Positions 3,328-64,000 of a stretch of DNA of 64,000 nucleotides are shown piece after piece; positions within the stretch are counted from its first letter, which is position 1; each line of letters begins with the position of its first letter. A model generated the notes under the pieces. It was not told where the DNA came from. It saw only the letters and a list, made by a program, of their open reading frames with translations, and made no database searches. This DNA is from Macrostomum hystrix (lineage: Eukaryota; Animalia; Platyhelminthes), in NCBI GenBank assembly GCA_950097015.1, contig CATNEN010000019.1, forward strand, positions 153,929 to 217,928, written 5' to 3'. Position numbers and translations under genes: made by a program.

Positions 3328-3358
3328 TTTTTATTTTATTTTTTTTAGTTTAAAAAAA

Positions 3359-4645: not shown

Positions 4646-4668
4646 ATATTTTTTTTCGGGGCTGAAAA

Positions 4669-5466: not shown

Positions 5467-5698
5467 GCTGCTTAATGATTTCTGCAAAGTTATAGTAGCT
5501 GTCATAGTCCTTTATGGTTACTCCATACTTATGAAACCAGTGTCTTTGGAGAGCTTGATTAATATTAGGGACATTGATATCGACGTTGGGCCAATATTTT
5601 CTCATGTACTCGCTGCATTCTTGTTTGCATCGGTATTTACTCTTGTAATTAGGCTCATGACTTTTGTAATAAGATCCTGGAGAGACGGTTGGGAGCAT
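5450..5698 (-). CDS. Small hypothetical Polinton protein (82 aa)
   Basis: ATG at 5698 has the same AAAAATG context as the other element genes; converges on and overlaps the penton stop. No family recognised. Confidence 0.45.
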   Translation of the reverse strand: MLPTVSPGSYYKSHEPNYKSKYRCKQECSEYMRKYWPNVDINVPNINQALQRHWFHKYGVTIKDYDSYYNFAEIIKQLTFAQ

Positions 5699-25023: not shown

Positions 25024-26669
25024 TCAACTACATGGCCTATCGCCAGTGTCATTGCCTGATGCAGCCCTGGCTTTGTCCAGCCGCAATCGTTCGACATAAC
25101 GTCGAAAAGACTCCAGCTCCATTCGATCGTCGGGTTCTTCCGCTCTTGCTGCTGCTACGTTGCTTGTTCCGGAGCCGTCATCATCGCTGCTCTCAGAATC
25201 CCACGCCGGTCCGCCTCCAATGAACATGTCAGATTTAAGACGCGTCGATGCCAAATCACTGGCAGTGGCGGCAGCCGTCGAGGCACCGGGAGCAGCGGAA
25301 GCTGCAGCAGCTTCTACTCGCAGCTTCTCATACATGGGAGCATAGTCTGTGTAGTACTCTCCAACAGCGTCCCGCACCCGGCTAAGGAAGAGCGGCAGGC
25401 CGTCGCCAGTAGCAGCGCTGACGCCAGCGCAACGAAGGCCGGCATAAAAGCTGTCAAGGATCAGGCTCATCGAGCGGGTCAGATTGCTCAAGTAGCTGCG
25501 TTCCTGGCGAAGAGCCTCCTACAACCCGGGATAAGCGGAGGAGCAAAGGATTTTAATTTGGGTGTAGCGGCTTTTAGCGCGATACGATGGCTTGCCAAAT
25601 GAAAGTGCGCTTGTATTTTGAGTGCGACACAATACGCTAGTATACAAATACGGCGAGATGCGATAGACATAATCGATGGAGTTTTCCTTTTTTTGCGGCC
25701 ATAGACAACATATTGCGGGGTTTCTGTGGCCGCCAATGTTGTGAAACTTTAGTCAATGGCTTTATGAATAGCTACCCGAATCCCCGTCTGACTACCATGA
25801 ACAGATTGAATCAGAGCATGGCGAGAATATTTTTTATAGCCATTGGGGTCAAAGATGATAAATAGTTGAAGTTGAAGTAGAATGCATGCACTTAAATCTT
25901 TATGTAGACATTCTGAAATGAACAGAAAATTACAAAAAAACGCACCTGAAAAGACTCGAAATCCTGCATCCACTCAATGGCAAAGTCGGCAGACATGATG
26001 TCCGTTTTGTTGAGAGCCACAACAAATGGCAGCCGAGTTTTGTAAAGAATGCTGCAAGCGTAGAGCATGTTGGACATAAAAGTGACTGGTGAGTGGCTCC
26101 GCGGCGTGTCCATTACATAAACTAGAACGGTTGGCAATTGAGCAGCCAGGGCCTCGGTGATAATTGAGCCGGAAGCAGACCAGGTGAACGCCTCAATTTG
26201 GCCAGGCGTGTCAACTAGCACGAAGTCTATGCTGGATCGGCGCGAATTAATAAGACCAAGCACCTGGTCGAACTTGGTAGCAAACAGGTTCAGGCAGGTT
26301 AGGATAGCTCCATTCGGGCCAAGACGATACTGAGACATCACTTCCTTGTAGTTCACCGTGTCCCGAATGTCAATACTAGCCTGCGTGACAAAATATTTAT
26401 GCTTCACCGCGACAGGACACCAAAACACAGTTTAGCAGAACGAAAAATTAAATACGACCTACCTGATAAGGCACTTGCAACACAGCAGGATCCATATTTA
26501 TTGGATAGGTAGGAGAGTTCTGGAACAACAGTTGAGCGTTAAGGCGCTGCACAAAAGTTGTCTTGCCGCTACCGGCCATACCCAGAATTAGCAGGCACAC
26601 AGGGCTATGTGCTGCAGGCTCTACCGTAGCTGGTTCGATCAATGATGCAGCTGGCATTGCTTCAGCCAT
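25024..26669 (-). CDS. GPN1: GPN-loop GTPase 1 (XAB1/Npa3)
   Basis: Exons 26669-26463, 26380-25946, 25518-25024 in phase. Motifs [61 protein letters not shown]. Confidence 0.95.
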
Positions 26670-27425
26670 TGTTTTACCAAGTTGGGCTTATTCAGCTGAA
26701 ACTGAAAGCGTAATAGAATAGCAAAGCAGCTAGAAATTCATTTAAATCTGTTCACTAACTAAACTGTCTACAAACCAACTGTCAGTCGAGCGGAAGGGAT
26801 CGTGTTGGGATTCGATGCTTTCCAAAACATATCTATCTGAGTTGAGGCCGAAGAAGAAAACACTCAGGGCAATTATAATGCTAGAATTGCCAAGTTGAAG
26901 TTTACGTTTTATTTTTAAATAAGTCGGGTCGTGACAGACAAGCTATATATGATATAGCAGATATATAGGTATAAGCAGAGAAAGGGAGATAGAAATTTCG
27001 GAATCGGACACCTTACAATGCAATTACTCAGTAAATTGCAGACGATATTTAGATTTCAAAGTGTAGTGGTGAGAAGTAAAAGTGCAACATAAAAATTTCA
27101 CAGGACGTTAGATTGAAACCGCAAGTTAACCAGATACTACTAGAACTAGACTTTTTAAGGCTTTAGATAAAAACTGATGTTAATGTAATGTAATCTAATA
27201 CCGAGACTGATTTTCATAGCTTTATGTTCTATCAGGGGAACTTTTAAGTTAAAAAAATGAGTAAGGCTGTGCGTATAGGCAACAGATATAAGATAGTCGA
27301 GCTAGGGGTCATTCTGGATAAATGGTAACATTTCGATCTTTAAGGGTCGATAGAGAACGTTAGAGAGAACGTTACTGAATATGCAAACAAGATGTAGTAG
27401 TTTTAGCGGTACAAGATGTAGTCGA

Positions 27426-28733
27426 TTATATGTAAAGACCCTCAGGTGTGCCCTCGTTCTTCCTATACAGAACGTTGTCCTTGGCCTTCTTAAAGTCATC
27501 GTTAGTGACTTTCATACGACGCTCGCGCAGAGCCAGCAGGCCAGCTTCGGTGCAGATAGCCTTGATGTCAGCACCTGATAGCTCCTCCTTGGACATGATG
27601 TATTCCTCCAGATTGACATCATCAGCCAAAGTCATTTTTGAGGTGTGAATGTTAACGATTCGGCGCTTGGTCTTTTCATCAGGCAGGGGAAACTCGATCT
27701 TGCGATCGATTCGACCTGGTCGGATGAGGGCCGGGTCCAAACTGTCGATACGATTCGTGGCCATGATCACCTTGACGTCGCCACGCGAGTCAAAGCCGTC
27801 CAGCTGGTTGAGCAGCTCAAGCATGGTGCGCTGGATTTCGCGCTCGCCGCCAGAGTTGGACTCATAGCGCTTGGTGCCGACAGCGTCAATCTCGTCGATG
27901 AACACAATGGATGGCGCGTGCTCTTCGGCTACACGGAAGATTTCGCGTACCAGCTTCGGCCCGTCTCCAAGGTATTTCTGGATAAGCTCGGAGCCGACAA
28001 CTCGTAGGAAGGTGGCCGAAGTGGCCGAGGCCACCGCCTTAGCAAGCAGGGTCTTTCCTGTGCCGGGAGCGCCATACAGGATTACTCCCTTCGGTGGCTT
28101 GATGCCCATCTCCTCGTAAAGCTCCGGGTGTGTAAGCGGTAGTTCCACAGACTCTTTGATCTCCTGTATCTGGGTGTCTAAACCGCCAATGTCCGCGTAG
28201 GTCTCTTTTGGTGCTTTATCTAACTTCATCATGGACACCATCGGATCAGCATCGTCAGCCAGCACGCCAACAACGGAGTGCATTTTATGGTTCAGCAGAA
28301 CTGAGCAGCCAGGCTCAAGAAGATCTTTGTCAACAAAGCTCAAGACGCTCACGTAGTGCTCAGACCCAACAGACGTGCTCACAATGGCGTGGTTATCGTC
28401 AATGATCTCTTCAAGTGAACCCACTGACATCGGTGATCCACGAAGATCATCTATCTTGGATCGCTCTTCTTCATTTTTTTCCTCGTCTGTCTTTAGGCGC
28501 TCCTGGTTCTTAATGAATTCCTCCTCCATCAGCAGGTAGTCTTTGATGCGCTCGAGTTTCAGCAGGCGCAGCTTGCATCGTGTATGCGGCGTTACAGTCG
28601 GCAATCGATCAGCCGAATCTGGGCCACGAGATTTTTTTTTCTTGCCAATGCGAGTTGGCACGGGTGGCTCATACTTCCGCTTCTTCTCCTTGTCCTTATC
28701 GCCACTCTGGCCTTGCTGTGACTGTCGCTGCCC
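27426..28733 (-). CDS. PSMC1: 26S proteasome AAA-ATPase subunit Rpt2 (S4); initiator ATG not adjacent
   Basis: Highly conserved Rpt2 sequence ([33 protein letters not shown]-terminal PEGLYI). The frame extends to acceptor TTGTCTTCCAG|GGG CAG at 28733, giving 435 aa without Met. Confidence 0.97.
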
Positions 28734-38501: not shown

Positions 38502-39500
38502 TCACTGAGAGGCTGTTGAAGTCGCCACAACCGGTGATTGGGGCGGCGGCTGCGCTGGTGAAGCTGCAGCCGAGTCAGACTGTACCCCAGACTGCTGTGG
38601 TGTCGAGTCCGAAGCCGATGTCACTGGAGCTATAGGGGGCTGCGACTGCTGCTGTTGTTGTATTTGAGACTGCGACTGAATCTGTTGATGCATCTGCGAA
38701 GCTGAAGTCTGGGGCGGTAGCATCTGATAAGAAATATTCGACTGTGGCGGCTGCTGCTGAGAATACACGGTGGGTGCGAATTGCGGGCGCATTATAGCTG
38801 CCGGCTGCTGCTGGAAATAGGCCGCGTTAGTTGGCTGCTGCTGCTGCCTAGCCGCAGCTGCAGCCGCAGCGGCAGCTGCTGCAGCGGCAGACGACCCGCT
38901 AGGCCCGACAGGGCCACCAGAGGTTGTGACACTACGAGGAGCTGGCGGTTGCTGCTGCATCATAGGTTGTTGTGGACGTTGCATCATTGCTGATTGCGGC
39001 TGCTGCATCATGGCCGGCTGCGGCTGCTGCATCATGGCCGGCTGAGGCTGCTGCAGCATGGCTTGCTGTGATTGTATCATAGATGGTTGCTGCATCATTG
39101 ATTGCTGAATCATGGCCGGCTGTGGTTGCTGCAGCAAGGCCTGTGTAGGCGGCTGCTGTTGCTGGATCATCACAGCCTGCTGTGGCTGCGGCGGCATTAT
39201 CATTTGTTGTGGTCCTGGGGTTCTCAACACTGCGCCAGGGCCTTGGGGCGGCGGCTGCATCGGTGCTTGTGCTGTTGGCTGAGATACACTATTGCTATGC
39301 GAATCAGCAATCGTCGCCAAGTATACAAGATTTCTGTGCAGTGTTTGCTGCAGTGTGGCCATCTCGTGAGTACGGCCGCGCTGCTCATACTCTAGCATTG
39401 CATTTATAAGTTGGGCATTCTCATCTAAAAGTCTTTGGATTGTTGCTGTATTAGGTGGTGCGGCTTTGCGAGCAGAAGCAGGTGAAAACGCCAGTGACAT
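38502..39500 (-). CDS. SS18: SS18/SSXT-family BAF complex subunit, intronless, 332 aa
   Basis: SNH domain IQRLLDENAQLINAMLEYEQRGRTHEMATLQQTLHRNLVYLATIADS followed by a Q/P/M-rich low-complexity region. Confidence 0.92.
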   Translation of the reverse strand: MSLAFSPASARKAAPPNTATIQRLLDENAQLINAMLEYEQRGRTHEMATLQQTLHRNLVYLATIADSHSNSVSQPTAQAPMQPPPQGPGAVLRTPGPQQMIMPPQPQQAVMIQQQQPPTQALLQQPQPAMIQQSMMQQPSMIQSQQAMLQQPQPAMMQQPQPAMMQQPQSAMMQRPQQPMMQQQPPAPRSVTTSGGPVGPSGSSAAAAAAAAAAAAARQQQQPTNAAYFQQQPAAIMRPQFAPTVYSQQQPPQSNISYQMLPPQTSASQMHQQIQSQSQIQQQQQSQPPIAPVTSASDSTPQQSGVQSDSAAASPAQPPPQSPVVATSTASQ

Positions 39501-42993: not shown

Positions 42994-44067
42994 GGGAGCA
43001 CGAGACTTGCCCGCAGGCGAACTGCCCGCCGAGATTTGCCCGCAGGAGATTTGCCCGTCGAGATTTGCCCGCCGAGGTTTGCCCGCAGAGATGTGCCCGC
43101 AGTGCATTCTGCCCGCAGGAGATTTGCCCGTCGAGATTTGCCCGCAGAGATTTTCCCGTCGAGATTTTCCCGTCGAGATTTGCCCGCAGAGATTTGCCCG
43201 CAGAGATTTGCCCGCAGAGATTTTCCCGCAATGTCGTGGGGTCCCCGACATGCACCATATAGGACTCCATGGCTTATTTACTGGATTTGTCGTTTGGTGG
43301 TTGAGCAGATCGAGGTGATAAAATCCAGGCGGCTGACATGTGAATTTGAAACAGACAGCGCTCCACCAGCTAGAGATTCCAATACCGGGACCGGGATTTG
43401 AGAGCAAACACCTGGAATTCCAATCTCAGGACTTAAAATTGCCCACCATTCAGCGGGATTTCAATTTTTCGGGATTTGCTGGGACTGAAAATGCTGGGGA
43501 TTTTATGGGAGTTGGACAGGAATATCCCGAACCCGACAATCCTGGGATTGGAAACTAGCCGGGATTTTACCATCCCTACCACCAGGCACCAGCAAAAAAT
43601 TGCTGCTACAAAAGATTATAGAACAGGCTACAGTAATTTAGCAGAAAGGAAATTTGAGGTGTCTGCAAAATGCCAAAGAAATATCTTATGCATTTGCGGC
43701 AGTAAGAGTTTCAGATTCACACGGTTGAAATCTGGCAGGTAAATAATTTTGATAAGTATAAGTCGATTTTTGCAAGATTAAAACTGTATTGCGGGAAAAT
43801 CTCTGCGGGCAAATCTCTGCGGGCAAATCTCGACGGGAAAATCTCGACGGGAAAATCTCTGCGGGAAAATCTCAACAGGCAAATCTCGACGGGCAAATCT
43901 CGACGGGCAAATCTCGACGGGCAAATCTCGACGGGCAAATCTCCTGCAGGCAGAATGCACTGCGGGCAAATCTCTGCGGGCAAACCTTGGCGGGCAAATC
44001 TCGACGGGCAAATCTCCTGCGGGCAAATCTCGGCGGGCAGTTCGCCTGCGGGCAAGTCTCATGGACC
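42994..44067. mobile_element. 1.07-kb non-autonomous DNA transposon with long TIRs made of subrepeats (Merlin-like)
   Basis: About 240-280-bp inverted arms made of GAGATTTGCCCG(C/T) subrepeats, starting with GGG; perfect 8-bp TSD GTGCTAAA (42986-42993 and 44068-44075). The superfamily is inferred from GG termini plus the 8-bp TSD. Confidence 0.85.
43371..43578. mobile_element. Small nested hAT-like MITE
   Basis: Ends TAGAGATT / CATCCCTA, GGGATT subrepeats, TSD CCACCAGC/CCACCAGG (7 of 8). Confidence 0.55.
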
Positions 44068-45283
44068 CGTGCTAAAGCTAGCTACGTTCAACTGCCATAC
44101 TTTTAAATCAACCTTCCGACCTACTGAGACAGCGGCACCTGCGGCTGGCTGGGCAAGTGATCAGGGCTGAAGTCTACTGCCCTAAGCCACTGCAGGATGT
44201 GCTTCTATGGACTCTGCAGGGACCTTGCAAGTGTGGACAGGGACAATCAGCCCATTTATATTGACCTGCTCTTCTCCGACACATGCGCCCTCAGCCAGAC
44301 TTACGGAGTGAAGCATGTCTGCAAACTAGCCTTTAAGCACGCATTTTGATGCTTCCCCCTTTTCTTAGGCCACTGTGTGGCCAGCAGGTTGACTTTTTTT
44401 ACTATCTCAGAAACAAATTCTAAGAAAGCCATACAAAAAATTTGGTAGCATTGAATATTGAATATTGAAATTATTGAGATTCAGATATATTTGGATGCAC
44501 ACAAAAAGGCCATAGGTAGTAAGACCCACTCTATAATAAAAAGTATAAAACTTGATAAATGGTAAGAAGGGCAACAGGCTTGATATGCACAACTCATGCA
44601 CACATATCATCCGAATCCTAATGTACATTTTGCACCAAACCCTCCCTATCTAGAGCCATCCTTAGGCAATACCAGAGCCATCCATACCAATCTGAATCTT
44701 AGGCTTGCAGACTAGAACATTTTTTTCTTTTTGAATGTTGGCTTAGACGTTAGAGACTAGAAACCTGAAAAACCTAGAAACCAAGAAACATAAACCTTAA
44801 ATTAAGCACTTAGGGCCTATACCAATGTCTAAAGGCTAAAAATACTCTGACATATATAATAAGTATCCAACAAACTCATAGAGCACACCTTTAGACAAGC
44901 TAGGGCCTATAATTAGCAAATCCTTGGCAAAAAAATTTTAAAACTGAGTTTGAATCTGACACAGATACTTTTGCCTCAAGAATTGATTTTTTTGTTTTCT
45001 TAAGTGAAAGTTAAAATTTATAATGAAAAATATGCTTGAACCATTGTCATTATGTAATTAAAACATAAAATATTTGATAGAACAAAATGGCAGCAGTAAA
45101 AAAGTAACAAAATATGCATCGGAAGGAAATGCCTGCAGACCCCAACAGTCGGAAGATTTTGCTCGCAGACCCCTACCCAATTTTAGGATTTCCGTATGAA
45201 CAATTGGGAATTCCGCTACTCATGGCCCTCAAGGCCACACTCCAGACCCAACCGTCTATGGCTCTAGCATATTAACTGCATTG

Positions 45284-45602: not shown

Positions 45603-45884
45603 GCTAAGCCTATGTCTTTTCGCAATCGAGCACTGCGGAGCATGTAGTCGTGTTTGCGAAAGTGCTAATATATATCACTGTGTCCTTCATGCACCATATT
45701 TCATTGTACTTTCGCGAAAATACCTTGCCCTGTATTAACATTGCTACTTCACTTTAAGCATTTTGCGAAAACATCATCTAATGTAACTAAAGTACTTAAA
45801 GTGCTTTTGCAAAAAAATACTGTTCTACCTTCGTTTGAATACGTATCCGTATTTCGCGAAAATACAAACAATAATAGTAATCAG

Positions 45885-46143
45885 CAGTACTATCTCTATT
45901 CCCTCAATAAATCTTATTGTTCTGTTAGACTGAATTATGAAATACGTATCCGTATTTTCGTTACAGTTTTTTTCGCCAAAAGTGACTCATCAATATAAAT
46001 AACCATATAACACACCAATCATTTGCAAGTGATCTGGCATGCAGGTCTAAAGCATTCATTTTTAGTAGCAGTGGCTCGGGTTCGAATCCCAGTCGGCACT
46101 ACGCATTTTTCTCAATTTAAAAAATCTGCTAATAATTTACTAC
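45885..46143 (+). repeat. Left arm of a diverged ~260-280-bp inverted repeat (partner 56200-56478)
   Basis: By-eye alignment of CTAACAGA..ATAA.ATTTATT.AG.GAAT, AATATAAATA.CCA.ATAACA, the tRNA-like cassette and AAAAA.C.GCTAA.A.TTTACTA blocks to the reverse complement of 56200-56478. Confidence 0.75.
46028..46100 (+). ncRNA. tRNA-like Pol III cassette (degenerate cloverleaf, not a canonical tRNA)
   Basis: Box A TGGCATGCAGG, perfect box B GGTTCGAATCC (46079-46089), T5 terminator at 46106-46110; acceptor and anticodon stems pair poorly. Confidence 0.6.
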
Positions 46144-46484
46144 TAATTACTACCTCTGGAATAATCAACAATAATTTAAGTGCCTTTTCAACATATAGAT
46201 AGACATTCAGAAATCAATTAATTATTAGTGTTTATGTTAATATGCTGTTCGAAACTAACTACTCTACTATGAGTAGACAATATAGCAACGTTAAATTTAT
46301 TATGAGTTCAATATTGTGGTTTTTCGCCATAGACCAACCTTGAATGATAGTTTATGTGATTAAACTGTCGTACGGGTCACGATAGCAGCTTGAGTTAGAA
46401 GCCGAGCGCGCTCGCTTAAGTAATCTGTGTAAAATTTCTTCTGTTATAAGCAGTTTGCAACAGCATCAAATAATAACCAGCGAA

Positions 46485-46826
46485 ATGGATACGTGCCCAG
46501 TCTGCAAGGCTTCAATTCGGAAGACGAATGTTGTAAGGCATTTTATTACAAATCATTCAGACTTCGTTTCGAGTTTTGATTGGAGCACAATTCCGGAGGT
46601 TCGACGACCCGCAATGACGGCATCGTATGACATCAAGGCAAGGACTGTATGGAAGATCATCCGGTTACGTCGGGATGGATCCAATCCAGATTTGTCTTAT
46701 TGTCAATACTGTGGCAAATGTGTTCAGCAGCTCAGTAAACACATTACGAGGTCATGCAAGCGTAAACCGACAATTACAGAGGCAGCAAATGCAACCCGTT
46801 CGTCAAGTGACAGCGACGACCTTTAG
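46485..46826 (+). CDS. Small two-zinc-finger protein (C2H2 plus C2HC); may splice onto the acidic ORF ending at 47173
   Basis: CPVC-x12-H-x4-H and CQYC-x9-H-x4-C motifs. The frame 46838-47173 is open (Ser-rich, DEEGDDGE acidic run, YRTRSGR) and could join through a short phase-2 intron. AATAAA near 47385. Confidence 0.55.
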   Translation: MDTCPVCKASIRKTNVVRHFITNHSDFVSSFDWSTIPEVRRPAMTASYDIKARTVWKIIRLRRDGSNPDLSYCQYCGKCVQQLSKHITRSCKRKPTITEAANATRSSSDSDDL

Positions 46827-47579
46827 TCGTGTTCTAGTGTTCTAGTCGACCTTTAACGACGGTTAGTCCTAGATGTTCAACAACGGACAACACCGAGTCG
46901 ACAAAGCCGGCCATCGATTCAGCAACACCATCGCCTATTTCGTCTACATCGTCTAGACGAAGCAGTCTTAGTCAACCGCCGATGTTTGGAGCATCGGCTG
47001 GACAAGGCAACGTTCACGACGATATCGACGAAGAAGGTGATGATGGTGAACAACAGCACGTCAGCAATGACAATGAGACCAGCTCGGATTCTGAGCTACT
47101 CATGGTTCGTCGAACGGAATACAGGACGCGATCTGGGCGCCTGATCAGTTCGAGAACTAGACTGGACATCTGAATGCTCATATTGTCCCAGTCGTGTCAC
47201 CTGACTTAATATGTGCTGATTGTCTGATTTGCCAAACTTATCAATTATCAATTGTGTCAATTGTGATACCCCCACTAATACCCGTCCCTTTACAACCGAG
47301 AATCTAATATGTTCTGTTTGTTGCTCTCTTATATATTGTTAAGATGCTAATGATTGTCAACACTGTGATTATTTCGTAAGTAAATAAATAAATTAACAAA
47401 TGAAATCATTTGATTATCATCTGATTAAACTAAGATTAAACTATTCTCGTTTTCTTAAAAGCCGCAGATACACGAAAAAATCATTCGTGATTATTGACAA
47501 TTAGCAGAAATATACTAAATTTGTCGATGGTAAAAAAAGTACAAGTCACTTTGTCTGAGAATACGTACGAGCTATCTAC

Positions 47580-50500
47580 GTTCGCGAAAATACCACAATA
47601 TATGTAGCCATGCACACTACTTCAATAACTTTTGCAAAAATACCGCCAACTACCTTTGTTTAATAGCATATCAGTATTTTCGCGAAAATACCATAATATG
47701 TAGCCATGCACACTACTTTAAGAACTTTTGCAAAAATACCGCCAACTACCTTTGTTTAAAGCATAGCAGTATTTTCGCGAAAATACCATAAGATGTAGCC
47801 ATGCACACTACTTTAAGAACTTTTGCAAAAATACCGCCAACTACCTTTGTTTAATAGCATAGCAGTATTTTCGCGAAAATACCATAAGATGTAGCCATGC
47901 ACACTACTTTAAGAAATTTTGCAAAAATACCGCCAACTACCTTTGTTTAAAGCATATCAGTATTTTCGCGAAAATACCATAAGATGTAGTCATGCACACT
48001 ACTTTAAGAACTTTTGCAAAAATACCGCCAACTACCCTTGTTTAATAGCATAGCAGTATTTTCGCGAAAATACCATAATATGTAGCCATGCACACTACTT
48101 TAAGAACTTTTGCAAAAATACCGCCAACTACCTTTGTTTAATAGCATAGCAGTATTTTCGCGAAAATACCATAAGATGTAGCCATGCACACTACTTTAAG
48201 AAATTTTGCAAAAATACCGCCAACTACCTTTGTTTAAAGCATATCAGTATTTTCGCGAAAATACCATAAGATGTAGCCATGCACACTACTTTAAGAACTT
48301 TTGCAAAAATACCGCCAACTACCTTTGTTTAAAGCATAGCAGTATTTTCGCGAAAATACCATAAGATGTAGTCATGCACACTACTTTAATCACTTTTGCA
48401 AAAATACCGCCAACTACCTTTGTTTAATAGCATAGCAGTATTTTCGCGAAAATACCTTAACATATAGCCACGCATATAACCTACTTTAATAACTTTTGCA
48501 AAAATACCGCCAACTACCTTTGTTTAATAGCATAGCAGTATTTTCGCGAAAATACCTTAACATATAGCCACGCATATAACCTACTTTAATAACTTTTGCA
48601 AAAATACCGCCAACAACTACCTCTGTTTAATAGCATATCAGTCTTTTCGCGAAAATACCATAAGATGTAGTATAGCCATGTGCAGTACTTCAATAAAGTT
48701 TTGCAAAAATACCGCCAACAACTACCTTTGTTTAATAGCATAGCAGTATTTTCGCGAAAATACCTTAAGATATAGCCACGCACACAACTTCAAGAACTTT
48801 TGCAAAAATACCGCCAACTACCTTTGTTTAATAGCATAGCAGTATTTTCGCGAAAATACCTTAACATATAGCCACGCATATAACCTACTTTAATAACTTT
48901 TGCAAAAATACCGCCAACTACCTTTGTTTAATAGCATAGCAGTATTTTCGCGAAAATACCTTAACATATAGCCACGCATATAACCTACTTTAATAACTTT
49001 TGCAAAAATACCGCCAACTACCTTTGTTTAATAGCATAGCAGTATTTTCGCGAAAATACCTTAAGATGTAGCCATGCACACTACTTTAATAACTTTTGCA
49101 AAAATACCGCAAACTACCTTTACTACCTTTGTTTAATAGCATAGCAGTATTTTCGCGAAAATACCATAAGATGTAGCCACGCACACTACCTACTTTAATA
49201 ACTTTTGCAAAAATACCGCCAACTACCTTTGTTTAATAGCATAGCAGTATTTTCGCGAAAAATACCATAAGATGTAGCCACGCACACTACCTACTTTAAT
49301 AACTGTTGCAAAAATACCGCCAACTACCTTTGTTTAATAGCATAGCAGTATTTTCGCGAAAATACCATAAGATGTAGCCACGCGCACTACCTACTTTAAT
49401 AACTGTTGCAAAAATACCGCCAACTACCTTTGTTTAATAGCATAGCAGTATTTTCGCGAAAATACCATAAGATGTAGCCACGCGCACTACCTACTTTAAT
49501 AACTGTTGCAAAAATACCGCCAACTACCTTTGTTTAATAGCATAGCAGTATTTTCGCGAAAATACCTTAAGATATAGCCACGCATATAACCTAATTTAAT
49601 AACTTATGCAAAAATACCGCCAACTACCTTTGTTTAATAGCATAGCAGTATTTTCGCGAAAATACCTTAAGATGTAGCCATGCACACTACTTTAATAACT
49701 TTTGCAAAAATACCGCAAACTACCTTTACTACCTGCGTTTAATAGCATAGCAGTATTTTCGCGAAAATACCTTAACATATAGCCACGCATATAACCTACT
49801 TTAATAACTTTTGCAAAAATACCGCCAACTACCTTTGTTTAATAGCATAGCATGCAGTCTTTTCGCGAAAATACCATAAGATGTAGTCATGCACACTACT
49901 TTAAGAACTTTTGCAAAAATACCGCCAACTACCCTTGTTTAATAGCATAGCAGTATTTTCGCGAAAAATACCATAATATGTAGCCATGCACACTACTTTA
50001 AGAACTTTTGCAAAAATACCGCCAACTACCTTTGTTTAATAGCATAGCAGTATTTTCGCGAAAATACCATAAGATGTAGCCATGCACACTACTTTAAGAA
50101 ATTTTGCAAAAATACCGCCAACTACCTTTGTTTAAAGCATATCAGTATTTTCGCGAAAATACCATAAGATGTAGTCATGCACACTACTTTAAGAACTTTT
50201 GCAAAAATACCGCCAACTACCCTTGTTTAATAGCATAGCAGTATTTTCGCGAAAATACCATAATATGTAGCCATGCACACTACTTTAAGAACTTTTGCAA
50301 AAATACCGCCAACTACCTTTGTTTAATAGCATAGCAGTATTTTCGCGAAAATACCATAAGATGTAGCCATGCACACTACTTTAAGAAATTTTGCAAAAAT
50401 ACCGCCAACTACCTTTGTTTAAAGCATATCAGTATTTTCGCGAAAATACCATAAGATGTAGCCATGCACACTACTTTAAGAACTTTTGCAAAAATACCGC

Positions 50501-52503
50501 CAACTACCTTTGTTTAAAGCATAGCAGTATTTTCGCGAAAATACCATAAGATGTAGTCATGCACACTACTTTAATCACTTTGCAAAAATACCGCCAACTA
50601 CCTTTGTTTAATAGCATAGCAGTATTTTCGCGAAAATACCTTAACATATAGCCACGCATATAACCTACTTTAATAACTTTTGCAAAAATACCGCCAACTA
50701 CCTTTGTTTAATAGCATAGCAGTATTTTCGCGAAAATACCTTAAGATGTAGCCATGCACACTACTTTAATAACTTTTGCAAAAATACCGCAAACTACCTT
50801 TACTACCTTTGTTTAATAGCATAGCAGTATTTTCGCGAAAATACCATAAGATGTAGCCACGCACACTACCTACTTTAATAACTTTTGCAAAAATACCGCC
50901 AACTACCTTTGTTTAATAGCATAGCAGTATTTTCGCGAAAATACCATAAGATGTAGCCACGCACACTACCTACTTTAAGAACTTTTGCAAAAATACCGCC
51001 AACTACCTTTGTTTAAAGCATAGCAGTATTTTCGCGAAAATACCATAAGATGTAGTCATGCACACTACTTTAATCACTTTTGCAAAAATACCGCCAACTA
51101 CCTTTGTTTAATAGCATAGCAGTATTTTCGCGAAAATACCTTAACATATAGCCACGCATATAACCTACTTTAATAACTTTTGCAAAAATACCGCCAACTA
51201 CCTTTGTTTAATAGCATAGCAGTATTTTCGCGAAAATACCTTAAGATGTAGCCATGCACACTACTTTAATAACTTTTGCAAAAATACCGCAAACTACCTT
51301 TACTACCTTTGTTTAATAGCATAGCAGTATTTTCGCGAAAATACCATAAGATGTAGCCACGCACACTACCTACTTTAATAACTTTTGCAAAAATACCGCC
51401 AACTACCTTTGTTTAATAGCATAGCAGTATTTTCGCGAAAATACCATAAGATGTAGCCACGCACACTACCTACTTTAATAACTGTTGCAAAAATACCGCC
51501 AACTACCTTTGTTTAATAGCATAGCAGTATTTTCGCGAAAATACCATAAGATGTAGCCACGCGCACTACCTACTTTAATAACTGTTGCAAAAATACCGCC
51601 AACTACCTTTGTTTAATAGCATAGCAGTATTTTCGCGAAAATACCATAAGATGTAGCCACGCGCACTACCTACTTTAATAACTGTTGCAAAAATACCGCC
51701 AACTACCTTTGTTTAATAGCATAGCAGTATTTTCGCGAAAATACCTTAAGATATAGCCACGCATATAACCTAATTTAATAACTTATGCAAAAATACCGCC
51801 AACTACCTTTGTTTAATAGCATAGCAGTATTTTCGCGAAAATACCTTAAGATGTAGCCATGCACACTACTTTAATAACTTTTGCAAAAATACCGCAAACT
51901 ACCTTTGTTTAATAGCATAGCAGTCTTTTCGCGAAAATACCATAAGATATAGCCACGCATATAACCTACATTAATAACTTTTGCAAAAATACTGCCAACT
52001 ACCTTTGTTTAATAGCATAGCAGTATTTTCGCGAAAATACCTTAAGATATAACCACGCATATAACCTAATTTAATAACTTATGCAAAAATACCGCCAACT
52101 ACCTTTGTTTAATAGCATAGCAGTATTTTCGCGAAAATACCTTAAGATGTAGCCATGCACACTACTTTAATAACTTTTGCAAAAATACCGCAAACTACCT
52201 TTACTACCTGCGTTTAATAGCATAGCAGTATTTTCGCGAAAATACCTTAACATATAGCCACGCATATAACCTACTTTAATAACTTTTGCAAAAATACCGC
52301 CAACTACCTTTGTTTAATAGCATAGCAGTCTTTTCGCGAAAATACCTTAAGATGTAGCCATGCACACTACTTTAATAACTTTTCCAGGTCACAGCCGCAA
52401 ACTACCTTTACTACCTGCGTTTAATAGGATAGCAGTCTTTTCGCGAAAATACCTTAAGATGTAGCCATTCACACTACTTTAATAACTTTTGCAAAAATAC
52501 CGC
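47580..52503 (+). repeat. Tandem array of ~50 units of ~96-100 bp with higher-order block duplications
   Basis: Consensus TTTTCGCGAAAATACCATAAGATGTAGCCATGCACACTACTTTAAGAACTTTTGCAAAAATACCGCCAACTACCTTTGTTTAATAGCATAGCAGTA; variant units recur in the same order in blocks. Confidence 0.97.
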
Positions 52504-52886
52504 TATTTACTTTCGGATAAAAGTCGTTATTTTATTTTCGCGATAACACCTGTAAATGAATTTTATTAATTAATACTTTGACACTTTGCATATACCTTCG
52601 TTTGAATGCGTAATACTATATATAGTAATAAGAAATATGATTTTTTTGCAACAGAAGTAGCAATTACCTACTTCACAACAATAAAAGCTCAAAACTGAGC
52701 ATATAAATTGATTTTATTTGTATGACTAATTATAAAATTGCATACAAAAACAGTATGAAACAGTAAAAAATATAAAAAAAACAGCTGAAAGACTGACTGA
52801 AGGACCGAGTAAAAATATAGTCGATAAAATAGCAGCATGCAGGCAGTTTGGTGTAAAAAAACCTGCTAACAGCACCGTCTTGTCGC

Positions 52887-55534
52887 TCATACTCGCCGGT
52901 CCGGGTGATCGCCAAACACATTGCGTATTGGGTGGCATTGTCCATCGCATTGGTAGTCGGCACTGAGGGAATGACCAATGAAGATGGCAACTACCGGACG
53001 CTTGTGCCCATCAGGTGTCGGTTCTAATCGGCGCTGAAAGTCCATCGAATACGCACTGACCGGAGCATGCCCAGCAAGCACTAACAGTCCGATTGAGCCT
53101 AGAGACGTGTCGAATAGCCTTGTATTTAGCATTGACTTCAAAAGTGTCTCCATTGACCAACGAAGTAGTGTGCACATGACTTCAGATGTGTCATCAAACA
53201 GTTGCGGGCGTAGCTCGTCAATAAACATGGCAGTGTGTATAGTCTCGCAGAGCTTGTCAAACATAAACGTGTTAGACCGCTTCTGCACCTGGATATTCAG
53301 CACTTTCGTAGAACCGAGATGGCTTTGCACAGAGTGGGTCTTCCCAACGCCAGACGGGCCGTATAGATAGACGACACCAGTTGGCAATTGCAACGCGCTG
53401 CACACAGCCTTTACAGTTGGGCACACGTTGGTGGCGGCGGCGATCAGCCGGGGAACATGAGCGACGGCGGCATCAAATACTTGAACAGCAGTAGCAGCGG
53501 AAGCAGCAACATCAGCAGCAGCAGAGACCTGTTGGATGGTGTTGTGTTGTTAGGTATGTTCGCATACAATTAATTAATTAATTGTCCAAAAGTAATAATT
53601 ATTTGAATTAAAACAACAGCAAAAATTCAATGATCAATACTCGTACGTGTGCTAAAAAATGTCATGTATTATAATATTTTGCATACCTCCAGCTGAGTAG
53701 GCAAGGTCGTCCTCGCATAGTCGGCTGTTGCAGCATCATCAGCAGCGGCGGCGGCGGCAGCGGCAGTAGGGCGACAGTTTTGGCAACCAGCTAGCACCTC
53801 TGTTGCTATTACGCGTTTCATCTGAGTCACCTTAAAGTAATCGCTGAGCTCTTGTCTGACACGAAAGTGTTCGAACATGAAGCCACTATCTAGCAAAGGC
53901 TCAGTAGATGACGTCTCATGAGCAGCAACCCAGCAAAAGGCCTTGGTCAGCAAGCTGCACTCTTGAGTAGAAACGCGGAAAAGAGCTGGAAACTCGTCCG
54001 TACTGGTAACTAGCTTAATTGCACTTGACGCACTGCGTACACCAGACACTGTCATTCTACACATTGTAGGATGCAGGTAGGCCGAAGCTTCCGCAGATTC
54101 CATCAAAAGGGCATGCAGTCCGCAGTAAACAGTGTAACCATCTTCTGGTTGGCGCAGGTTCAGGAACATCAGCAAACCATTGGGATGATTCGGAGCTCCT
54201 AAACATTCACGGATTGACATGTTGTATTTCTGCTGACGACGCGCTCGGATTTCTTCGCTGGTCAGCATGTCAACCTGAATACATGATGTTGCACCGATGG
54301 CAACTGTGCACATGGAGCTACCAATTCATCTTCTAGAAACGCCTTGAATTTTTCCACATCGCTCGAGATGAATGCAATCTCTATAAGATGTAGCGTCCTT
54401 CTAGTCATAAGAACCGACCTGCCCTCTGCTGTTAAAGAGGCGTAGTCGGTAATTGGAGCTCGAGGACATAGCCGTAGAAGTGGTGATGTCGAACGACACA
54501 ACGCATATTCATCGGCTATCGGAGCAAATGCCACGCCACCAACTTGCTGCTGCTGCTGTTGCCGCTGCTGCGGTTGTTGATCTCGCTGATGATGCTGCTG
54601 CTGCGATTGCTGCCGTCGTCCCGACTGTTGCGCTGTTGATTCAAAAGCGTCGACATACGCTGGAGAAAATACTGCGAGAGCTGGTTCATCATCATCGGAT
54701 ATTGTCCCATTCTCGATGACAGACATTGCCGGTGTAGAGCGAGGCGCATAATCTGGCGAAGTCGGACAGGCACCAAGTGCGGCACTATTTTTAGGAATAG
54801 TAGACTCGCCATTTACGCGCAATAATTCTGCCACCTCTGTTTTGTACTTATCATCAACTAGCTGCGATGACAAGGCTGAACTATTAGAAGCCGTCAAAAC
54901 AGGGGCAGTGTTCGACTCTACATTGTCTGTATTGCTCGTCCACTCGTCCACAATCTCCAGCTGTACGTCGTCTGCTAGCAAGTCCGTCCGCTGAGTCATC
55001 TTCAGATGATAGCACTTTAGGCGTGGACTCTATGCGATTAGCATGGTCGCCGGCGCCACAATTGATTGTGCGGCAATAACCAGAGGCTGTCGCATGGCTA
55101 CCAAAGATCCAACGCCAGTGTCTTCAGCATCAGACGACGATGTAGTGCTAGACGAAGCATCCAAGTCGACAACTACACGCGTCCGCTTGCGTAGAGTCGA
55201 TCGGACACGTCGACGCTTCTGAACTGCGGTTGTAATAACAGTTCGCTGCTGCTGCTGCTGCTGCTGCTGCGGTTGCTGTTGCTGCTGTACTACTGCTGCA
55301 CGGCGGGGAACGTAGAAGGCAGCCGACGCCCTGCCAGCCGTTCCTGCCCAGTGCTGCAAAAGATGCCGATGCTGCTTGCCCACACGGTCTAATTAAGTCG
55401 CCAGTAGGACGATTGGTTGACTGCTCAGATCTAAAGTAGTCCACGATCCTAGTCTGGCGTAGACCATTAGCATCCGGTGTAGCAATGCTGGCATCCACAC
55501 GAGCCTTCTTTCCACGGCCACGAAATGCTGACAT
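52887..55534 (-). CDS. Spliced ~790-aa putative replication protein: PIP box, basic NLS-like stretch, Q/A tracts, unknown central domain, C-terminal SF3-type (AAA+) helicase
   Basis: Phase-0 GT-AG introns at 55101-55030, 54321-54275 and 53686-53529 join four open frames. Walker A YGPSGVGKT (53360-53337), Walker B AMFIDE, Arg-finger-like DFQRRL. QTRIVDYF at 55456-55433. The link between the first ORF (55534) and the next frame needs a 3n+1 intron or a frameshift and is unresolved. Confidence 0.65.
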
Positions 55535-56199: not shown

Positions 56200-56478
56200 A
56201 TAGTAAAATGTTAGCTGCTTTTTTAATTAAAATTAAAACGTAGGGCTGACTGGGATTCGAACCCGGGCCCCTGGTATTAGAGAGAAATGCCTTAGACCTG
56301 CACGCCAGATCACTAACAATCAAATTAGTTGTTATCTGGCTATTTATATTTATTTTCTTTCGCATGTTCGAGTTTTAATGACGTTTGTCTGCAAATGGTG
56401 AAATCTTGATCACTAATACAATTTTTTTTTCTAACAGACTGATAATATTTATTCAGCGAATATAGAGAGTAGTAGTTC
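56200..56478 (-). repeat. Right arm of the diverged inverted repeat
   Basis: Reverse-complement similarity to 45885-46143; lies upstream of the helicase gene. Confidence 0.75.
56242..56314 (-). ncRNA. Second tRNA-like Pol III cassette, facing inward
   Basis: Minus strand AGTGATCTGGCGTGCAGGTCTAAGGC...CCGGGTTCGAATCCCAGTCAGCCCT followed by TTTT; perfect box B. Confidence 0.6.
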
Positions 56479-56794
56479 AGGAACGTTTTGCAAAAATACT
56501 ACCCTTACCTTTGTTTTGGAAACATATCAGTATTTTTGCGAAAATACTTTAATTCCTGAATATGCATAGACAATAAATACACTTTTCGCGAAAATACCAG
56601 CATTTGAGTCTATTCACAGCCAAGTCAGTTTACGAATCGACCTCCATCGCATATAGCCCTCTGACATCCGTAATTCCATATAAACTAGAGTTTACGGACT
56701 TAGAGAATTTTATCATGTCAGTGATAAAATTTTCGACCGTCCCCAGAGCTTAGTTGGTGTGGCTGGTGGAGTAAATGCAGGTATTATATATATA

Positions 56795-62070: not shown

Positions 62071-64000
62071 CTAGCAAGTTTTGCCCCCCTCCGGGGAGCA
62101 CAAATATTTTTAATTCGTCCAGTGTATACTTTTTAGCAGCTGTATTTTTTTAAGCTACAATGATGGATGGAGGATGGAATGGAGGATAGCAATTTAGCCC
62201 CCCGTTCGGGGGCACATTTTACAACATGGTGTAAATAGCAATTCAGTGATTTGAGCGAGCAGTATACAATTCGGACTCAATTGTGTTAAAGTACGAAAGC
62301 TAGGCCTTTTGACATTGATAGCTTTCAGCAAAATTTTATTCAATTCCCTCTCGTCGTGACTCAGAAGCGGACAGTCGCATGGCTGCTTTAGGTAAAAACC
62401 GATTGACATTGACAACATTGACAAAGCATCAACATTGACAAATGATTAAAAAAATCGATGCAAGTGGATTGCAACTTAATTGTTTATAATGAGGTACGGT
62501 TCTAGTCATCTTTTGTTACAAAATACAAACTGTCTGCTTCCGTTTTGCATTGGCGTCTATCCATCAGGGATTTTTGTTAACCGAGAGGGAGGCCCTTCCC
62601 TGATGCAGCAGCAAGCAAATCATAAATCAGGAACCTTAAAAATTCATTTGCGAATTGCGTCCTTGAGATTTGAATAGAAAAATGCTTGCTGCTTAGAGAC
62701 CAAGGCAGTCACCAAGTAGAAAAATGGGCAGATAACATTAAAATAGTATAGAAACAATAGCAAAGTTTACTGAATTGGACTTCGACGAAAAAACAGCACT
62801 TTACGAAAAACTGTCCCTTGAAGACGGAAGTCTAAACATTGAAAGCAATTGGAAGCATGTGGGCCAATGAATTCGCTGTCATCGTCGATTGACGGCATGT
62901 CTGTGCGGACAGGTGTAAAAAAATGTCCGTTAAAGACAAGTTTATAAACATTGGAAGCATGTGGGCCAATGAATTCGCTGTCATCGTCGATTGACGATTA
63001 AAACGGGATATTTTTAACGGGCACATTTTAGCTTTGGATTAGGCTTACATTCCATTCCTAAACCACGTGGAATTGTTTATGAGTAGCGTTTATGAGCTCC
63101 GTTTCCAATTGTACATGATTGCTTCCCAAAAATTCAGCTCTCTGTACGAGAATGAGCTATCCCACTGACATTTACCGCTGATGAAATCAAGGGCACTCCA
63201 ACGATAAGTTTCAGAAACTGTTGGTCAGCCTAATCTTCAGAAAGCACCTCTGGGTACACAATGTTTCTCGTCTTGTTACCGGAAATCCGGATGCGAACAT
63301 TGGCTGCATCTTTGGCCCGAGACAGAGCGGTGTACAGCTGGCCGTGGCGAAGCAGCCTTCCGCCAAGTCGATGCCCACGGTCTCCAGAGACTGGCCCTGA
63401 GCTTTGTGAACCGTCAGGCAGAAGCTGGCCCGGACGGGAAAACTGCAGCCTCTTGAAGCACACTGGCAGGTCCGCATTGTTCGGCTGTAGCGGAATCCGG
63501 GGCAGCAGAATCTCGTCACCAGAGAATTGGCCTGCCGCAACTTTGCACCGCAGCACATTGTCCCCCCAGTGCCAGGACAATCAGTCGCGTTCCGTTGCAC
63601 AGCCGTGGCGGGTTGATGTTTCGCAGAAGCACCACCGGCATGCCCACTTTGAACTTAAGCAGGTGCTTCGGCAAGTTCGGTGCCTCCAATCGGTTGAGCA
63701 GCTCAGGAGGGAAGTGCGTGGCAGAATCCTCATCAGCCACGCTGTCGATCGACTTGATCTCCCGCATGCTGCCCGGGAACATGGCCAGGCACTCATCGTT
63801 GATCGCATCAACGGCCTCGTTATACGGAGCCAAAATTACTCTGCTGGCAAAGTAGGCGTCTCTAGCGTCAGTTGCTTCGAACGAAGGGTAAACGAACTCG
63901 ATCAGGTCCTTCAGGGAGGCACCTGCCGGCATCAGGATCTCAGGCGGAAGCGAAACGTTGCCATCAGAGTCCTCCTCAATAGAACCTGAGCCGATCTGTG
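62071..64000 (-). mobile_element. Helitron 3' portion with a frameshifted PIF1-like helicase C-terminus
   Basis: ILAPYNEAVDAIN, LKFKVGMPVVLLRNINPPRLCNGTRL, FCLTVHKAQGQSLETVGIDL, HGQLYTALSR, TRNIVYPEVL* (stop at 63230), spread over three frames. 3' hairpin CTCCCCGGAGGGGG plus CTAG at 62074-62071. Confidence 0.92.

What the first reader, a model, noticed from the sequence alone, without database searches (positions are those of the whole stretch)
52887..55534. Four-exon SF3-helicase protein hidden across separate ORFs, laid out like papillomavirus E1 / polyomavirus large T
Seen: three phase-0 GT-AG introns (72, 47 and 158 nt) fuse four frames into ~740 aa, plus a ~50-aa N-terminal ORF. The order is disordered N-terminus with KRRRVR..RKRTR, a ~200-aa globular region, CQNC, then Walker A GPSGVGKT, a B'-like SNTFMFDKL stretch, Walker B AMFIDE and DFQRRL. 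Established: E1, LT and parvoviral NS1 combine an HUH-derived origin-binding domain with an SF3 helicase. Inference: the central region (RECLGAPNHPNGLLMF...ASAYLH) may be a degenerate HUH fold (compare the circoviral E.G..TPHLQG motif II and YxxK motif III); this resemblance is weak.
Basis: partly seen in the sequence, partly recalled or inferred. Interest (0 to 1): 0.85.

Follow-up and report, generated by a model that had tools for sequence, protein, structure and literature searches.

The report
Orphan lid-less AAA+ ATPase gene, degraded
The region holds a real but damaged copy of a very rare animal (flatworm-type) gene. Its end encodes a ring-ATPase-type motor domain that may or may not be of the viral "SF3 helicase" kind, and nothing supports the proposed virus-like DNA-cutting (HUH) domain.

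Summary
The last ORF block (P-loop domain) is truly coding. It has five relatives among billions of proteins: two from the flatworm Macrostomum lignano and three metagenome fragments, at 30-43% identity. No virus carries a relative.

Curated libraries (Pfam, PHROGs, NCBIfam, PDB sequences) match only the P-loop. Two relatives give sub-threshold but near full-length matches to SF3 families (DUF5906, RNA_helicase).

Profile-profile comparison shows an AAA+ core. It scores 91% against a D5/P4-type SF3 profile, almost without gaps. It scores 97% against a classical AAA profile, but only with two large indels. SF3 versus other AAA+ is therefore unresolved. The family lacks a lid domain and has conserved Cys/His clusters.

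The HUH idea fails: the quoted residues are not conserved. Only the third proposed intron looks like an intron. The first hides one in-frame stop in exon-like sequence. The N-terminal ORF is in another frame. Inside the ATPase exon, a conserved 24-residue motif lies out of frame (two compensating frame changes).

A zinc-finger gene is the convergent neighbour in both genomes. In the window an inverted repeat brackets the pair.

The parts
52887..55534 (-). The whole gene-like unit, given as one part because it is broken. Depending on how two doubtful introns are read, it carries up to one in-frame stop and up to four frame changes, two of them compensating inside the ATPase exon.
   Evidence: ORF list, sequence, composition and frames, frame comparison with relatives.
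52887..53460 (-). AAA+ type ATPase core with a short C-terminal His/Cys tail and no lid domain. Walker A is at 53337-53360, Walker B at 53214-53231, the sensor-1-like strand at 53067-53087, the RR motif at 53025-53042 and H-x7-C-x3-C at 52935-52973.
   Evidence: Relatives at E 1e-23 to 1e-27. Invariant columns in the alignment. hhalign 96.6% to a classical AAA profile and 91.4% to a D5/P4-type SF3 profile.
53529..53686 (-). AT-rich 158-nt stretch bounded by GT and AG. It is the only one of the three proposed introns that looks like an intron. M. lignano has no counterpart: its ORF is continuous here.
   Evidence: GC 0.272 with 3-4 stops in every frame, against exon GC 0.50-0.58. Sequence. L001 sequence.
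53831..54166 (-). The part of the middle region that aligns with the M. lignano locus (29% identity over 59 and 41 residues). Its fold is unknown and there is no HUH signature.
   Evidence: No Pfam or PDB match. No D5_N likeness.
53774..53785 (-). CxxC, conserved in the three family members that reach this far (window, P0001, P0005). Together with the conserved C-P-x5-C just before Walker A it is a candidate four-Cys metal site.
   Evidence: Alignment, sequences.
55177..55218 (-). Basic cluster (K-R-R-R-V-R ... R-K-R-T-R) resembling a nuclear localisation signal, inside a poly-Q/Ser-rich low-complexity region.
   Evidence: ORF translation. The function is inferred.
55433..55456 (-). PIP-box-like motif (Q-x-x-I-x-x-Y-F) at residues 27-34 of the N-terminal ATG ORF, which is in another frame than the following ORF.
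   Evidence: The background is 13 such matches per 128,000 codons in the six-frame translation of the window. It was not found upstream in L001.
46455..46826 (+). Neighbouring ORF with two CxxC...H zinc-finger-like motifs, convergent with the ATPase gene. A homologue sits in the same relative position and orientation next to the M. lignano gene.
   Evidence: Pairwise BLASTP E 5e-11, 29% over 117 residues. These are the only shared ORFs besides the ATPase gene.
45888..46142 (.). Left arm of an inverted repeat, lying 5' of the zinc-finger ORF.
   Evidence: 155 nt at 78% plus 42 nt at 81% identity to the right arm.
56201..56471 (.). Right arm of the inverted repeat, lying 5' of the ATPase gene.
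   Evidence: No such repeat exists at the M. lignano locus.
47553..52551 (.). 5-kb satellite array of 96-100-bp units lying between the two convergent genes.
   Evidence: About 50 copies. GC skew about -0.3.

Best explanation
This is a copy of a lineage-restricted nuclear gene family, known only from the flatworm Macrostomum lignano and a few metagenome fragments. The product has a long disordered, basic and poly-Q N-terminal half, a middle domain of unknown fold, a Cys cluster, and a compact AAA+ ATPase core at the very C-terminus that lacks the usual lid domain.

Shown: the AAA+ core, its motif order, the missing lid, the conserved Cys/His positions, the restricted distribution, and the conserved pairing with a zinc-finger gene.

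Inferred: by its geometry the core most likely assembles into a ring and uses ATP to move along DNA, in the manner of SF3-type helicases. That geometry is a short Walker A-B spacing, a hairpin-like insert before the sensor-1 strand, an RR motif, and helical and metal-binding parts in front of the core rather than a lid behind it. The basic cluster and the PIP-like motif would take it to the nucleus and perhaps to PCNA.

The window copy is not a clean four-exon gene. It carries one convincing intron, two doubtful ones (one of which merely hides an in-frame stop), an unlinked N-terminal ORF, and two compensating frame changes that put the family's hairpin motif out of frame. It is therefore probably a decaying copy, or at best one with altered function. 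Its membership in SF3 and a viral origin are not established.
For: - Family and distribution. There were 4 hits in 1.84e9 representatives and one more in the 90% clusters, and none in IMG/VR or JGI contig scans.
- AAA+ core: hhalign 96.6% (P 7e-10) to a classical AAA profile and 91.4% (P 9e-7) to a D5/P4-type SF3 profile. The SF3 alignment puts Walker A, Walker B, the hairpin, the sensor-1 strand and RR in register.
- The post-Walker-B part alone scores 24-26 against a shuffled-profile null of 11.3 +/- 1.9, maximum 15.8.
- SF3-like geometry: the alignment with the SF3 profile is almost gapless, while the AAA profile needs a 14-residue deletion and an 11-residue insertion. Extended sub-threshold Pfam matches are to DUF5906 and RNA_helicase only. 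DUF5906 is the AAA+ core of D5/NrS-1 helicases (PMC9611036).
- No lid: the complete members with a natural C-terminus end about 30-50 residues after the RR motif.
- Same architecture at the M. lignano locus, with host genes COG7 and EME1 upstream.
- Degradation. Conserved host genes in the same window have intact ORFs of 330-410 codons, so assembly error is an unlikely cause.
Against: - No curated model or solved structure is matched above threshold beyond the P-loop.
- Both AlphaFold models are of low confidence (pLDDT 42 and 54), and their Foldseek hits are noise. The ring/translocase mechanism therefore rests on motif geometry alone.
- The classical AAA profile scores higher than the SF3 profile.
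- The position aligned with the motif-C Asn of the P4-type profile is His in the family.
- The compensating pair of frame changes keeps the conserved downstream part in frame, which could mean the copy is still under selection rather than decaying.
- The two doubtful introns could be real: GT-AG ends are present, and M. lignano has a canonical intron about ten codons away from the second one.
- No expression data were available.
Confidence: 0.5

Rival explanations
1. One reading: an intact four-exon gene for a papillomavirus E1 / polyomavirus large-T-like replication initiator. It would have a degenerate HUH-derived origin-binding domain followed by a zinc motif and an SF3 helicase, acquired from a DNA virus.
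For: - The domain order resembles E1/large T: disordered N-terminus with a basic cluster, a globular middle, CxxC, then a lid-less ATPase.
- The 91% hhalign match to a D5/P4-type SF3 profile has the hairpin motif in register.
- There are sub-threshold SF3 Pfam matches.
- GT-AG ends exist for all three gaps.
Against: - No E1, large-T, NS1 or Rep model or structure was returned by any search.
- The middle region has no HUH or origin-binding match, and the quoted residues are not conserved.
- No viral contig encodes a relative.
- A classical AAA profile scores higher.
- The first 'intron' is exon-like and hides a stop. The hairpin motif is out of frame in this copy.
Confidence: 0.1
2. A purely cellular, fast-evolving offshoot of the classical AAA clade (FtsH/proteasomal/Cdc48 type). 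It would have lost its lid and gained a small insert, with no viral or mobile-element ancestry. On this reading the SF3 likeness is convergence or shared AAA+ ancestry.
For: - The highest profile-profile score is to the classical AAA profile (96.6%, score 70.7 against 48.5).
- The sensor-1 to RR stretch aligns with the second region of homology of AAA proteins.
- The genes carry introns, sit among host genes in M. lignano and have poly-Q tracts typical of host proteins.
Against: - It needs a 14-residue deletion and an 11-residue insertion relative to AAA, whereas the SF3 alignment is nearly gapless.
- There is no lid.
- Pfam AAA (PF00004) matches only the first 16-24 profile positions.
- The post-Walker-B part does not favour AAA over SF3 (25.8 against 24.3).
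Confidence: 0.25
3. The ATPase gene and the zinc-finger gene together are the remains of one inverted-repeat-bounded, ambisense DNA element (a virus-like element or large transposon) that entered macrostomid genomes. The window copy would be an old, decayed insertion later invaded by a satellite array.
For: - The two genes are convergent neighbours in both genomes, while no other flanking ORF is shared.
- In the window an inverted repeat of about 260 nt (78-81% identity) brackets exactly this pair, with one arm 5' of each gene.
- The same window holds a Polinton-like fragment, a reverse transcriptase and a Pif1/Helitron-like fragment, so mobile DNA is abundant here.
Against: - There is no inverted repeat at the M. 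lignano locus.
- The window holds only a single copy, and there are no hits in viral or metagenome contig scans.
- No capsid, integrase, transposase or polymerase gene lies inside the unit.
- The repeat arms could be two copies of a short dispersed repeat, or a shared promoter.
- Conserved microsynteny of two host genes would explain the pairing equally well.
Confidence: 0.15

Closest known systems
D5 / phage P4 alpha / NrS-1-type SF3 helicase core (Pfam DUF5906, PF19263)
   Same: - Walker A, Walker B, a Gly-Asp...Lys hairpin-type motif, the sensor-1 strand and an RR motif align in register over 110 columns with almost no gaps (91%, P 9e-7).
- One relative matches 106 of 114 profile positions of PF19263.
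- There is no lid, and the helical part lies in front of the core.
   Different: - The Pfam score is below the cut-off (19.2 against 27.6 bits).
- His stands where the aligned profile has Asn.
- Walker B is D-E as in cellular AAA+.
- There is no D5_N-like collar and no primase or Pox_D5 domain.
- It sits in an intron-bearing animal gene, and no viral relative was found.
Classical AAA clade (Pfam PF00004; FtsH, proteasomal Rpt, Cdc48)
   Same: - It gives the best profile-profile score (96.6%, P 7e-10, 123 columns).
- Walker A and B are very similar.
- The sensor-1 to RR stretch resembles the second region of homology.
   Different: - There is a 14-residue deletion between Walker A and B and an 11-residue insertion before the sensor-1 strand.
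- There is no lid domain.
- PF00004 itself matches only the P-loop.
- There are Cys/His clusters before and after the core.
Papillomavirus E1 and polyomavirus large T antigen
   Same: The order of parts resembles them: a disordered N-terminus with a basic cluster, a globular middle region, a CxxC motif, then a lid-less ATPase at the C-terminal end.
   Different: - No match to their Pfam models or to their solved structures came back from any search with the window's pieces or the family profile.
- Direct fetching of these animal-virus proteins was barred and was not done, so the likeness is one of layout only.
HUH-endonuclease plus SF3 Rep proteins (CRESS-DNA virus Rep, parvovirus NS1)
   Same: One relative (P0001) aligns with 88 of 105 positions of Pfam RNA_helicase (PF00910), the SF3 model that also covers such Reps (E 0.006, below cut-off).
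   Different: There is no HUH motif or catalytic Tyr motif conserved between the window and M. lignano. Viral_Rep, Gemini_AL1 and Parvo_NS1 gave no hit.

Membership tests
AAA+ superfamily (ASCE P-loop ATPases) | Walker A, Walker B with catalytic Glu, a polar sensor-1 residue at the end of the next core strand, and an arginine finger, in that order | tested here: met
   Alignment of six members. hhalign 96.6% to a classical AAA profile and 91.4% to an SF3 profile, with these motifs in register. Controls with an A32-like ATPase and a GPN GTPase gave nothing beyond the P-loop.
AAA+ superfamily (ASCE P-loop ATPases) | C-terminal alpha-helical lid domain after the core | tested here: not met
   The complete members with a natural C-terminus end about 30-50 residues after the RR motif, and the AAA profile alignment stops before the lid. 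SF3 helicases also lack this lid (established knowledge).
SF3 helicases | Significant match to a curated SF3 model (DUF5906, RNA_helicase, Parvo_NS1, PPV_E1_C, Polyoma large-T C-terminal) or to a solved SF3 structure | tested here: not met
   Only sub-threshold matches: PF19263 19.2 bits (cut-off 27.6) and PF00910 17.5 bits (cut-off 21.5). No SF3 chain appeared among the best PDB profile hits shown.
SF3 helicases | B' motif / beta-hairpin between Walker B and motif C | tested here: inconclusive
   In relatives a conserved Gly-Asp...Lys stretch aligns in register with the corresponding motif of the P4-type profile. The low-confidence model shows two short strands there. In the window copy this motif is not in the reading frame.
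SF3 helicases | Motif C with a conserved Asn as sensor 1 | tested here: not met
   His (Val in one member) stands at the position aligned with Asn of the P4-type profile.
SF3 helicases | Compact spacing of motifs A, B and C (about 40-50 residues each) | tested here: met
   43 residues from the Walker A Lys to the Walker B Asp, and 49 from there to the sensor-1-like His in the window ORF. The alignment with the SF3 profile is nearly gapless.
E1 / large-T / Rep-type initiators | Origin-binding or HUH endonuclease domain N-terminal to the helicase (HUH motif and catalytic Tyr for Rep/NS1) | tested here: not met
No family or PDB match for the middle region.
Classical AAA clade (PF00004) | Full-length match to the AAA model, including the second region of homology | tested here: inconclusive
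   PF00004 matches only profile positions 1-16 or 1-24. A home-made eight-sequence AAA profile aligns 123 columns at 96.6%, but with two large indels.
Endogenous viral element | Relatives in virus genomes or viral contigs | tested here: not met
   The IMG/VR scan found none. The phage collection gave only chance-level hits. All five relatives are cellular (M. lignano) or unassigned metagenome fragments.

The most novel reading that the evidence does not exclude
The ATPase gene and its zinc-finger partner are the remains of a so far undescribed ambisense DNA element of macrostomid flatworms, bounded by inverted repeats. Its replication protein would combine an unknown DNA-binding domain, a Cys4 metal site and a highly divergent SF3-type helicase. 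One copy would have been kept by M. lignano as an intron-bearing host gene.
Probability: 0.12. Interest if true: 0.7.

Novelty: new variant of a known kind. Interest (0 to 1): 0.38.

Why it matters
If the core is a true SF3 helicase, this would be a captured replication protein from an unknown DNA element in flatworms. It would then be a lead to a virus or transposon lineage that has left no other trace in the databases. If it is instead a cellular AAA offshoot, it is an unusual lid-less AAA+ design with metal-binding ends. That would interest AAA+ specialists but would not be surprising.

Either way the family is tiny, with five relatives among billions of proteins, and it is uncharacterised. 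The copy in this window is probably not functional, which limits its immediate value.

Tried and rejected
- Single-sequence and profile searches of Pfam, PHROGs, NCBIfam and PDB sequences gave only P-loop-level matches.
- Two AlphaFold jobs, on the window exon and on relative P0005, each with the shallow family alignment, gave pLDDT 42 and 54. Foldseek against PDB and BFVD returned noise.
- Scans of IMG/VR, of JGI metagenome contigs twice and of the phage collection found no relative.
- The middle exon found nothing among proteins of 0.55-1.75 times its length.
- A D5_N-like collar in front of the core was rejected (score 17.2, shuffled-profile maximum 19.7).
- Synteny with M. lignano beyond the two genes is absent.
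- The source contig could not be identified by exact-protein look-up.
- An E. coli satellite primase fetched as an SF3 comparator proved to be DUF927, not DUF5906, and was dropped. No accession for phage NrS-1 was found in papers.
- The PIP-like motif was not found at the M. lignano locus, so it is not a family feature as far as can be seen.
Full report
**Scope and rules followed**

The spliced model was examined exon by exon, always by reference. The joined four-exon protein was not built, searched or folded, and that step was left out on purpose. Because of this, and because the search for homologous proteins only sees proteins of 0.55-1.75 times the query length, full-length kin of the middle and N-terminal pieces may have been missed. 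Only the ATPase exon was searched without a length limit. Breaks are counted but their places are not listed.

**Observation**

On the minus strand of 52887-55534 lie an ATG ORF of 128 codons and four further ORFs of 117, 245, 214 and 179 codons. All quoted motifs are present.

The window is an animal-type genome. It holds a BTB-BACK-Kelch gene split by an intron of about 1.1 kb, a proteasomal AAA ATPase, a GPN-loop GTPase gene with a clear 83-nt GTAGGT...CAG intron, an SSXT gene, a reverse transcriptase, a Pif1-type fragment and a Polinton-like fragment.

**Relatives**

The ATPase exon (window:52890-53528, minus strand) has four relatives at E <= 0.001 among 1.84 billion representatives.
- P0002 (E 1.8e-27, 43% identity) and P0001 (E 1.9e-23, 42%) are both from the flatworm Macrostomum lignano.
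- P0003 and P0004 are metagenome fragments.
- A profile search added P0005.
- No relative was found in IMG/VR, in two JGI contig scans or in the phage collection.
- The window itself has one copy.

The M. lignano locus (L001) has the same build. A long disordered poly-Q ORF is followed by a canonical GTGAGT intron, a middle-region ORF, and then the P0001 ORF after one frame change. COG7 and EME1 lie upstream. The middle region is only 29% identical over 59 and 41 residues. The N-terminal half is not alignable.

**What the ATPase is**

Pfam, PHROGs, NCBIfam and PDB sequence searches, with single sequences and with family profiles, return only P-loop-length matches to many unrelated NTPases. There are two exceptions, both below cut-off:
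- P0005 aligns with positions 1-106 of 114 of DUF5906 (E 0.002, 19.2 bits).
- P0001 aligns with positions 1-88 of 105 of RNA_helicase (E 0.006, 17.5 bits).

Both are SF3 families. DUF5906 is the AAA+ core of the poxvirus D5 and phage NrS-1 helicases (PMC9611036) and is treated as an SF3 helicase in mavirus-like elements (PMC13215967).

Two AlphaFold jobs gave unusable models, and Foldseek on the better one (P0005) returned noise.

I therefore built two comparator profiles from sequences fetched by the tools:
- Phage P4 alpha, which Pfam confirms to carry D5_N, DUF5906 and Pox_D5, plus nine phage primase-helicases.
- The window's own proteasomal ATPase plus seven plasmid-borne FtsH/AAA genes.

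hhalign results for the family without the window row:

| Comparator profile | Probability | P-value | Score | Columns | Gaps |
|---|---|---|---|---|---|
| D5/P4-type SF3 | 91.4% | 9e-7 | 48.5 | 110 | almost none |
| Classical AAA | 96.6% | 7e-10 | 70.7 | 123 | 14-residue deletion between Walker A and B; 11-residue insertion before the sensor-1 strand |

- In the SF3 alignment, Walker A, Walker B, a Gly-Asp...Lys hairpin-type motif, the sensor-1 strand and an RR motif are all in register.
- In the AAA alignment, the 11-residue insertion is exactly the hairpin-type motif.
- The part after Walker B alone scores 24.3 (SF3) and 25.8 (AAA), against a shuffled-profile null of 11.3 +/- 1.9, maximum 15.8.
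- The window's A32-like ATPase and GPN GTPase serve as negative controls.

The core is therefore certainly AAA+. Similarity favours the classical clade. Geometry favours SF3: the spacings, the hairpin insert, and the absence of a lid (members with a natural C-terminus end about 30-50 residues after the RR motif). The position aligned with the SF3 motif-C Asn is His. I do not file the family as SF3.

Conserved Cys/His positions suggest metal sites on both sides of the core: CxxC, then C-P-x5-C before Walker A, and H-x(5-8)-C-x3-C at the end.

**Middle region and the HUH idea**

The middle region has no family or PDB match and no likeness to the D5_N collar. The idea is not supported, and the fold remains unknown.

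**Gene integrity**

- The third proposed intron is AT-rich (GC 0.27), has stops in every frame and is convincing. M. lignano has no intron there.
- The first has exon-like GC (0.56), a length divisible by three and the same frame on both sides. It hides a single in-frame stop, so it may be a nonsense mutation rather than an intron.
- The second (GC 0.49) changes frame. M. lignano has a canonical intron about ten codons away, in another phase, so this one may be real.
- The N-terminal ATG ORF is in a different frame from the next ORF, and I did not look for a bridging intron.
- Inside the ATPase exon, the 24-residue hairpin-type motif conserved in all relatives is 0/24 identical in the ORF frame but 50-54% identical in another frame (E about 1e-5). 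That means two compensating frame changes.

In total there is up to one stop and four frame changes. Host genes in the same window have intact ORFs of 330-410 codons, so assembly error is unlikely. The compensated pair keeps the conserved sensor-1, RR and Cys/His parts in frame. That pattern fits either past selection or a copy with an altered hairpin.

**Context**

The ORF at 46455-46826 (+), with two zinc-finger-like motifs, is homologous to an ORF next to the M. lignano gene (E 5e-11). In both genomes it is convergent with the ATPase gene. No other flanking ORF is shared.

In the window an inverted repeat brackets exactly this pair, with one arm 5' of each gene: 45888-46142 against 56201-56471, at 78-81% identity. 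A 5-kb satellite of 96-100-bp units lies between the genes. M. lignano has no such repeat.

This could be conserved microsynteny, a shared promoter element, or the ends of an old two-gene element. The data cannot tell these apart.

**Mechanism**

Shown: an AAA+ core with catalytic Walker B Glu, a sensor-1-like residue and an RR motif.

Inferred: ring assembly and ATP-driven movement along DNA in relatives with an intact hairpin motif; nuclear targeting by the basic cluster; and possible PCNA contact through the PIP-like motif of the window's N-terminal ORF. That motif has a background rate of about 1e-4 per codon and is not seen in M. lignano. In the window copy the hairpin is replaced by unrelated residues, so DNA translocation is probably lost.

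**Novelty**

This is an uncharacterised, extremely narrow family: an unusual lid-less AAA+ design, possibly a captured SF3 helicase. It is a new variant of a known kind. Interest is moderate because the key claim (SF3 type, viral origin) remains open and this copy looks degraded.

- None was put into a tool call, a note or this report. All comparisons reported rest on sequences that tools supplied.
- In my reasoning I also worked out where the frame changes lie in the window and at the M. lignano locus. One alternative-frame ORF from the tool's ORF list was sent by reference to Pfam and used in a script that printed no coordinates. The places are not listed in the notes or here.

Noticed in passing
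window 1-5500: Polinton/Maverick-like fragment. ORF 3248-4642 (+) weakly matches the double jelly-roll capsid-like domain PF21738 (E 5e-5). ORF 1048-1887 (-) weakly matches the A32-type packaging ATPase PF04665 (E 6e-6). Both matches are near or below cut-off. Neighbouring ORFs of 242-395 codons have no match.
   Followed up: partly
window 46455-46826 (+) and L001 16710-17651 (-): A zinc-finger-like gene is the convergent neighbour of the ATPase gene in both the window and M. lignano (29% identity over 117 residues, E 5e-11). In M. lignano a 537-codon ORF with no known domain follows it; the window has no counterpart of that ORF.
   Followed up: partly
window 45888-46142 and 56201-56471: An inverted repeat (78-81% identity) brackets the zinc-finger gene, the satellite array and the ATPase gene. 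Single satellite-like monomers lie just outside or inside the arms, at 45757-45865 and 56473-56547, both in direct orientation.
   Followed up: partly
window 47553-52551: A 5-kb tandem satellite of about 50 units of 96-100 bp with higher-order structure and strong negative GC skew (about -0.3).
   Followed up: no
window 42994-44068: Two arrays of a 14-bp minisatellite in inverted orientation form 235-nt arms that are 93% complementary around a 605-nt spacer.
   Followed up: no
window 63516-63932 (-): ORF with a Pif1 2B domain (PF21530, E 1e-16) at the right edge of the window. It is probably part of a Helitron-type or Pif1-like helicase gene.
   Followed up: no
window 13981-15426 (+): Reverse transcriptase ORF (RVT_1, E 2e-28), so a retroelement lies in the window.
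   Followed up: no
L001 11201-11922: Just downstream of the M. lignano ATPase gene lies a small element with perfect 48-nt terminal inverted repeats. It encloses an ORF with transposase-type helix-turn-helix domains (HTH_29, HTH_23, Sleeping Beauty-type HTH).
   Followed up: partly
protein P0002 (M. lignano, UniRef A0A1I8FT91): The public gene model fuses a second paralogue of the ATPase family to a rhodopsin-type receptor-like C-terminus. It also lacks about 18 residues between Walker A and B. It is probably a chimeric or mis-spliced model.
   Followed up: no
window 20767-23582 (-), 25400-26700 (-), 27429-28661 (-), 38505-39500 (-): Ordinary host genes with intact long ORFs: BTB-BACK-Kelch (two exons, about 1.1-kb intron), a GPN-loop GTPase (83-nt canonical intron), a proteasomal AAA ATPase and an SSXT-domain protein. 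They served as internal controls for assembly quality and intron style.
   Followed up: partly
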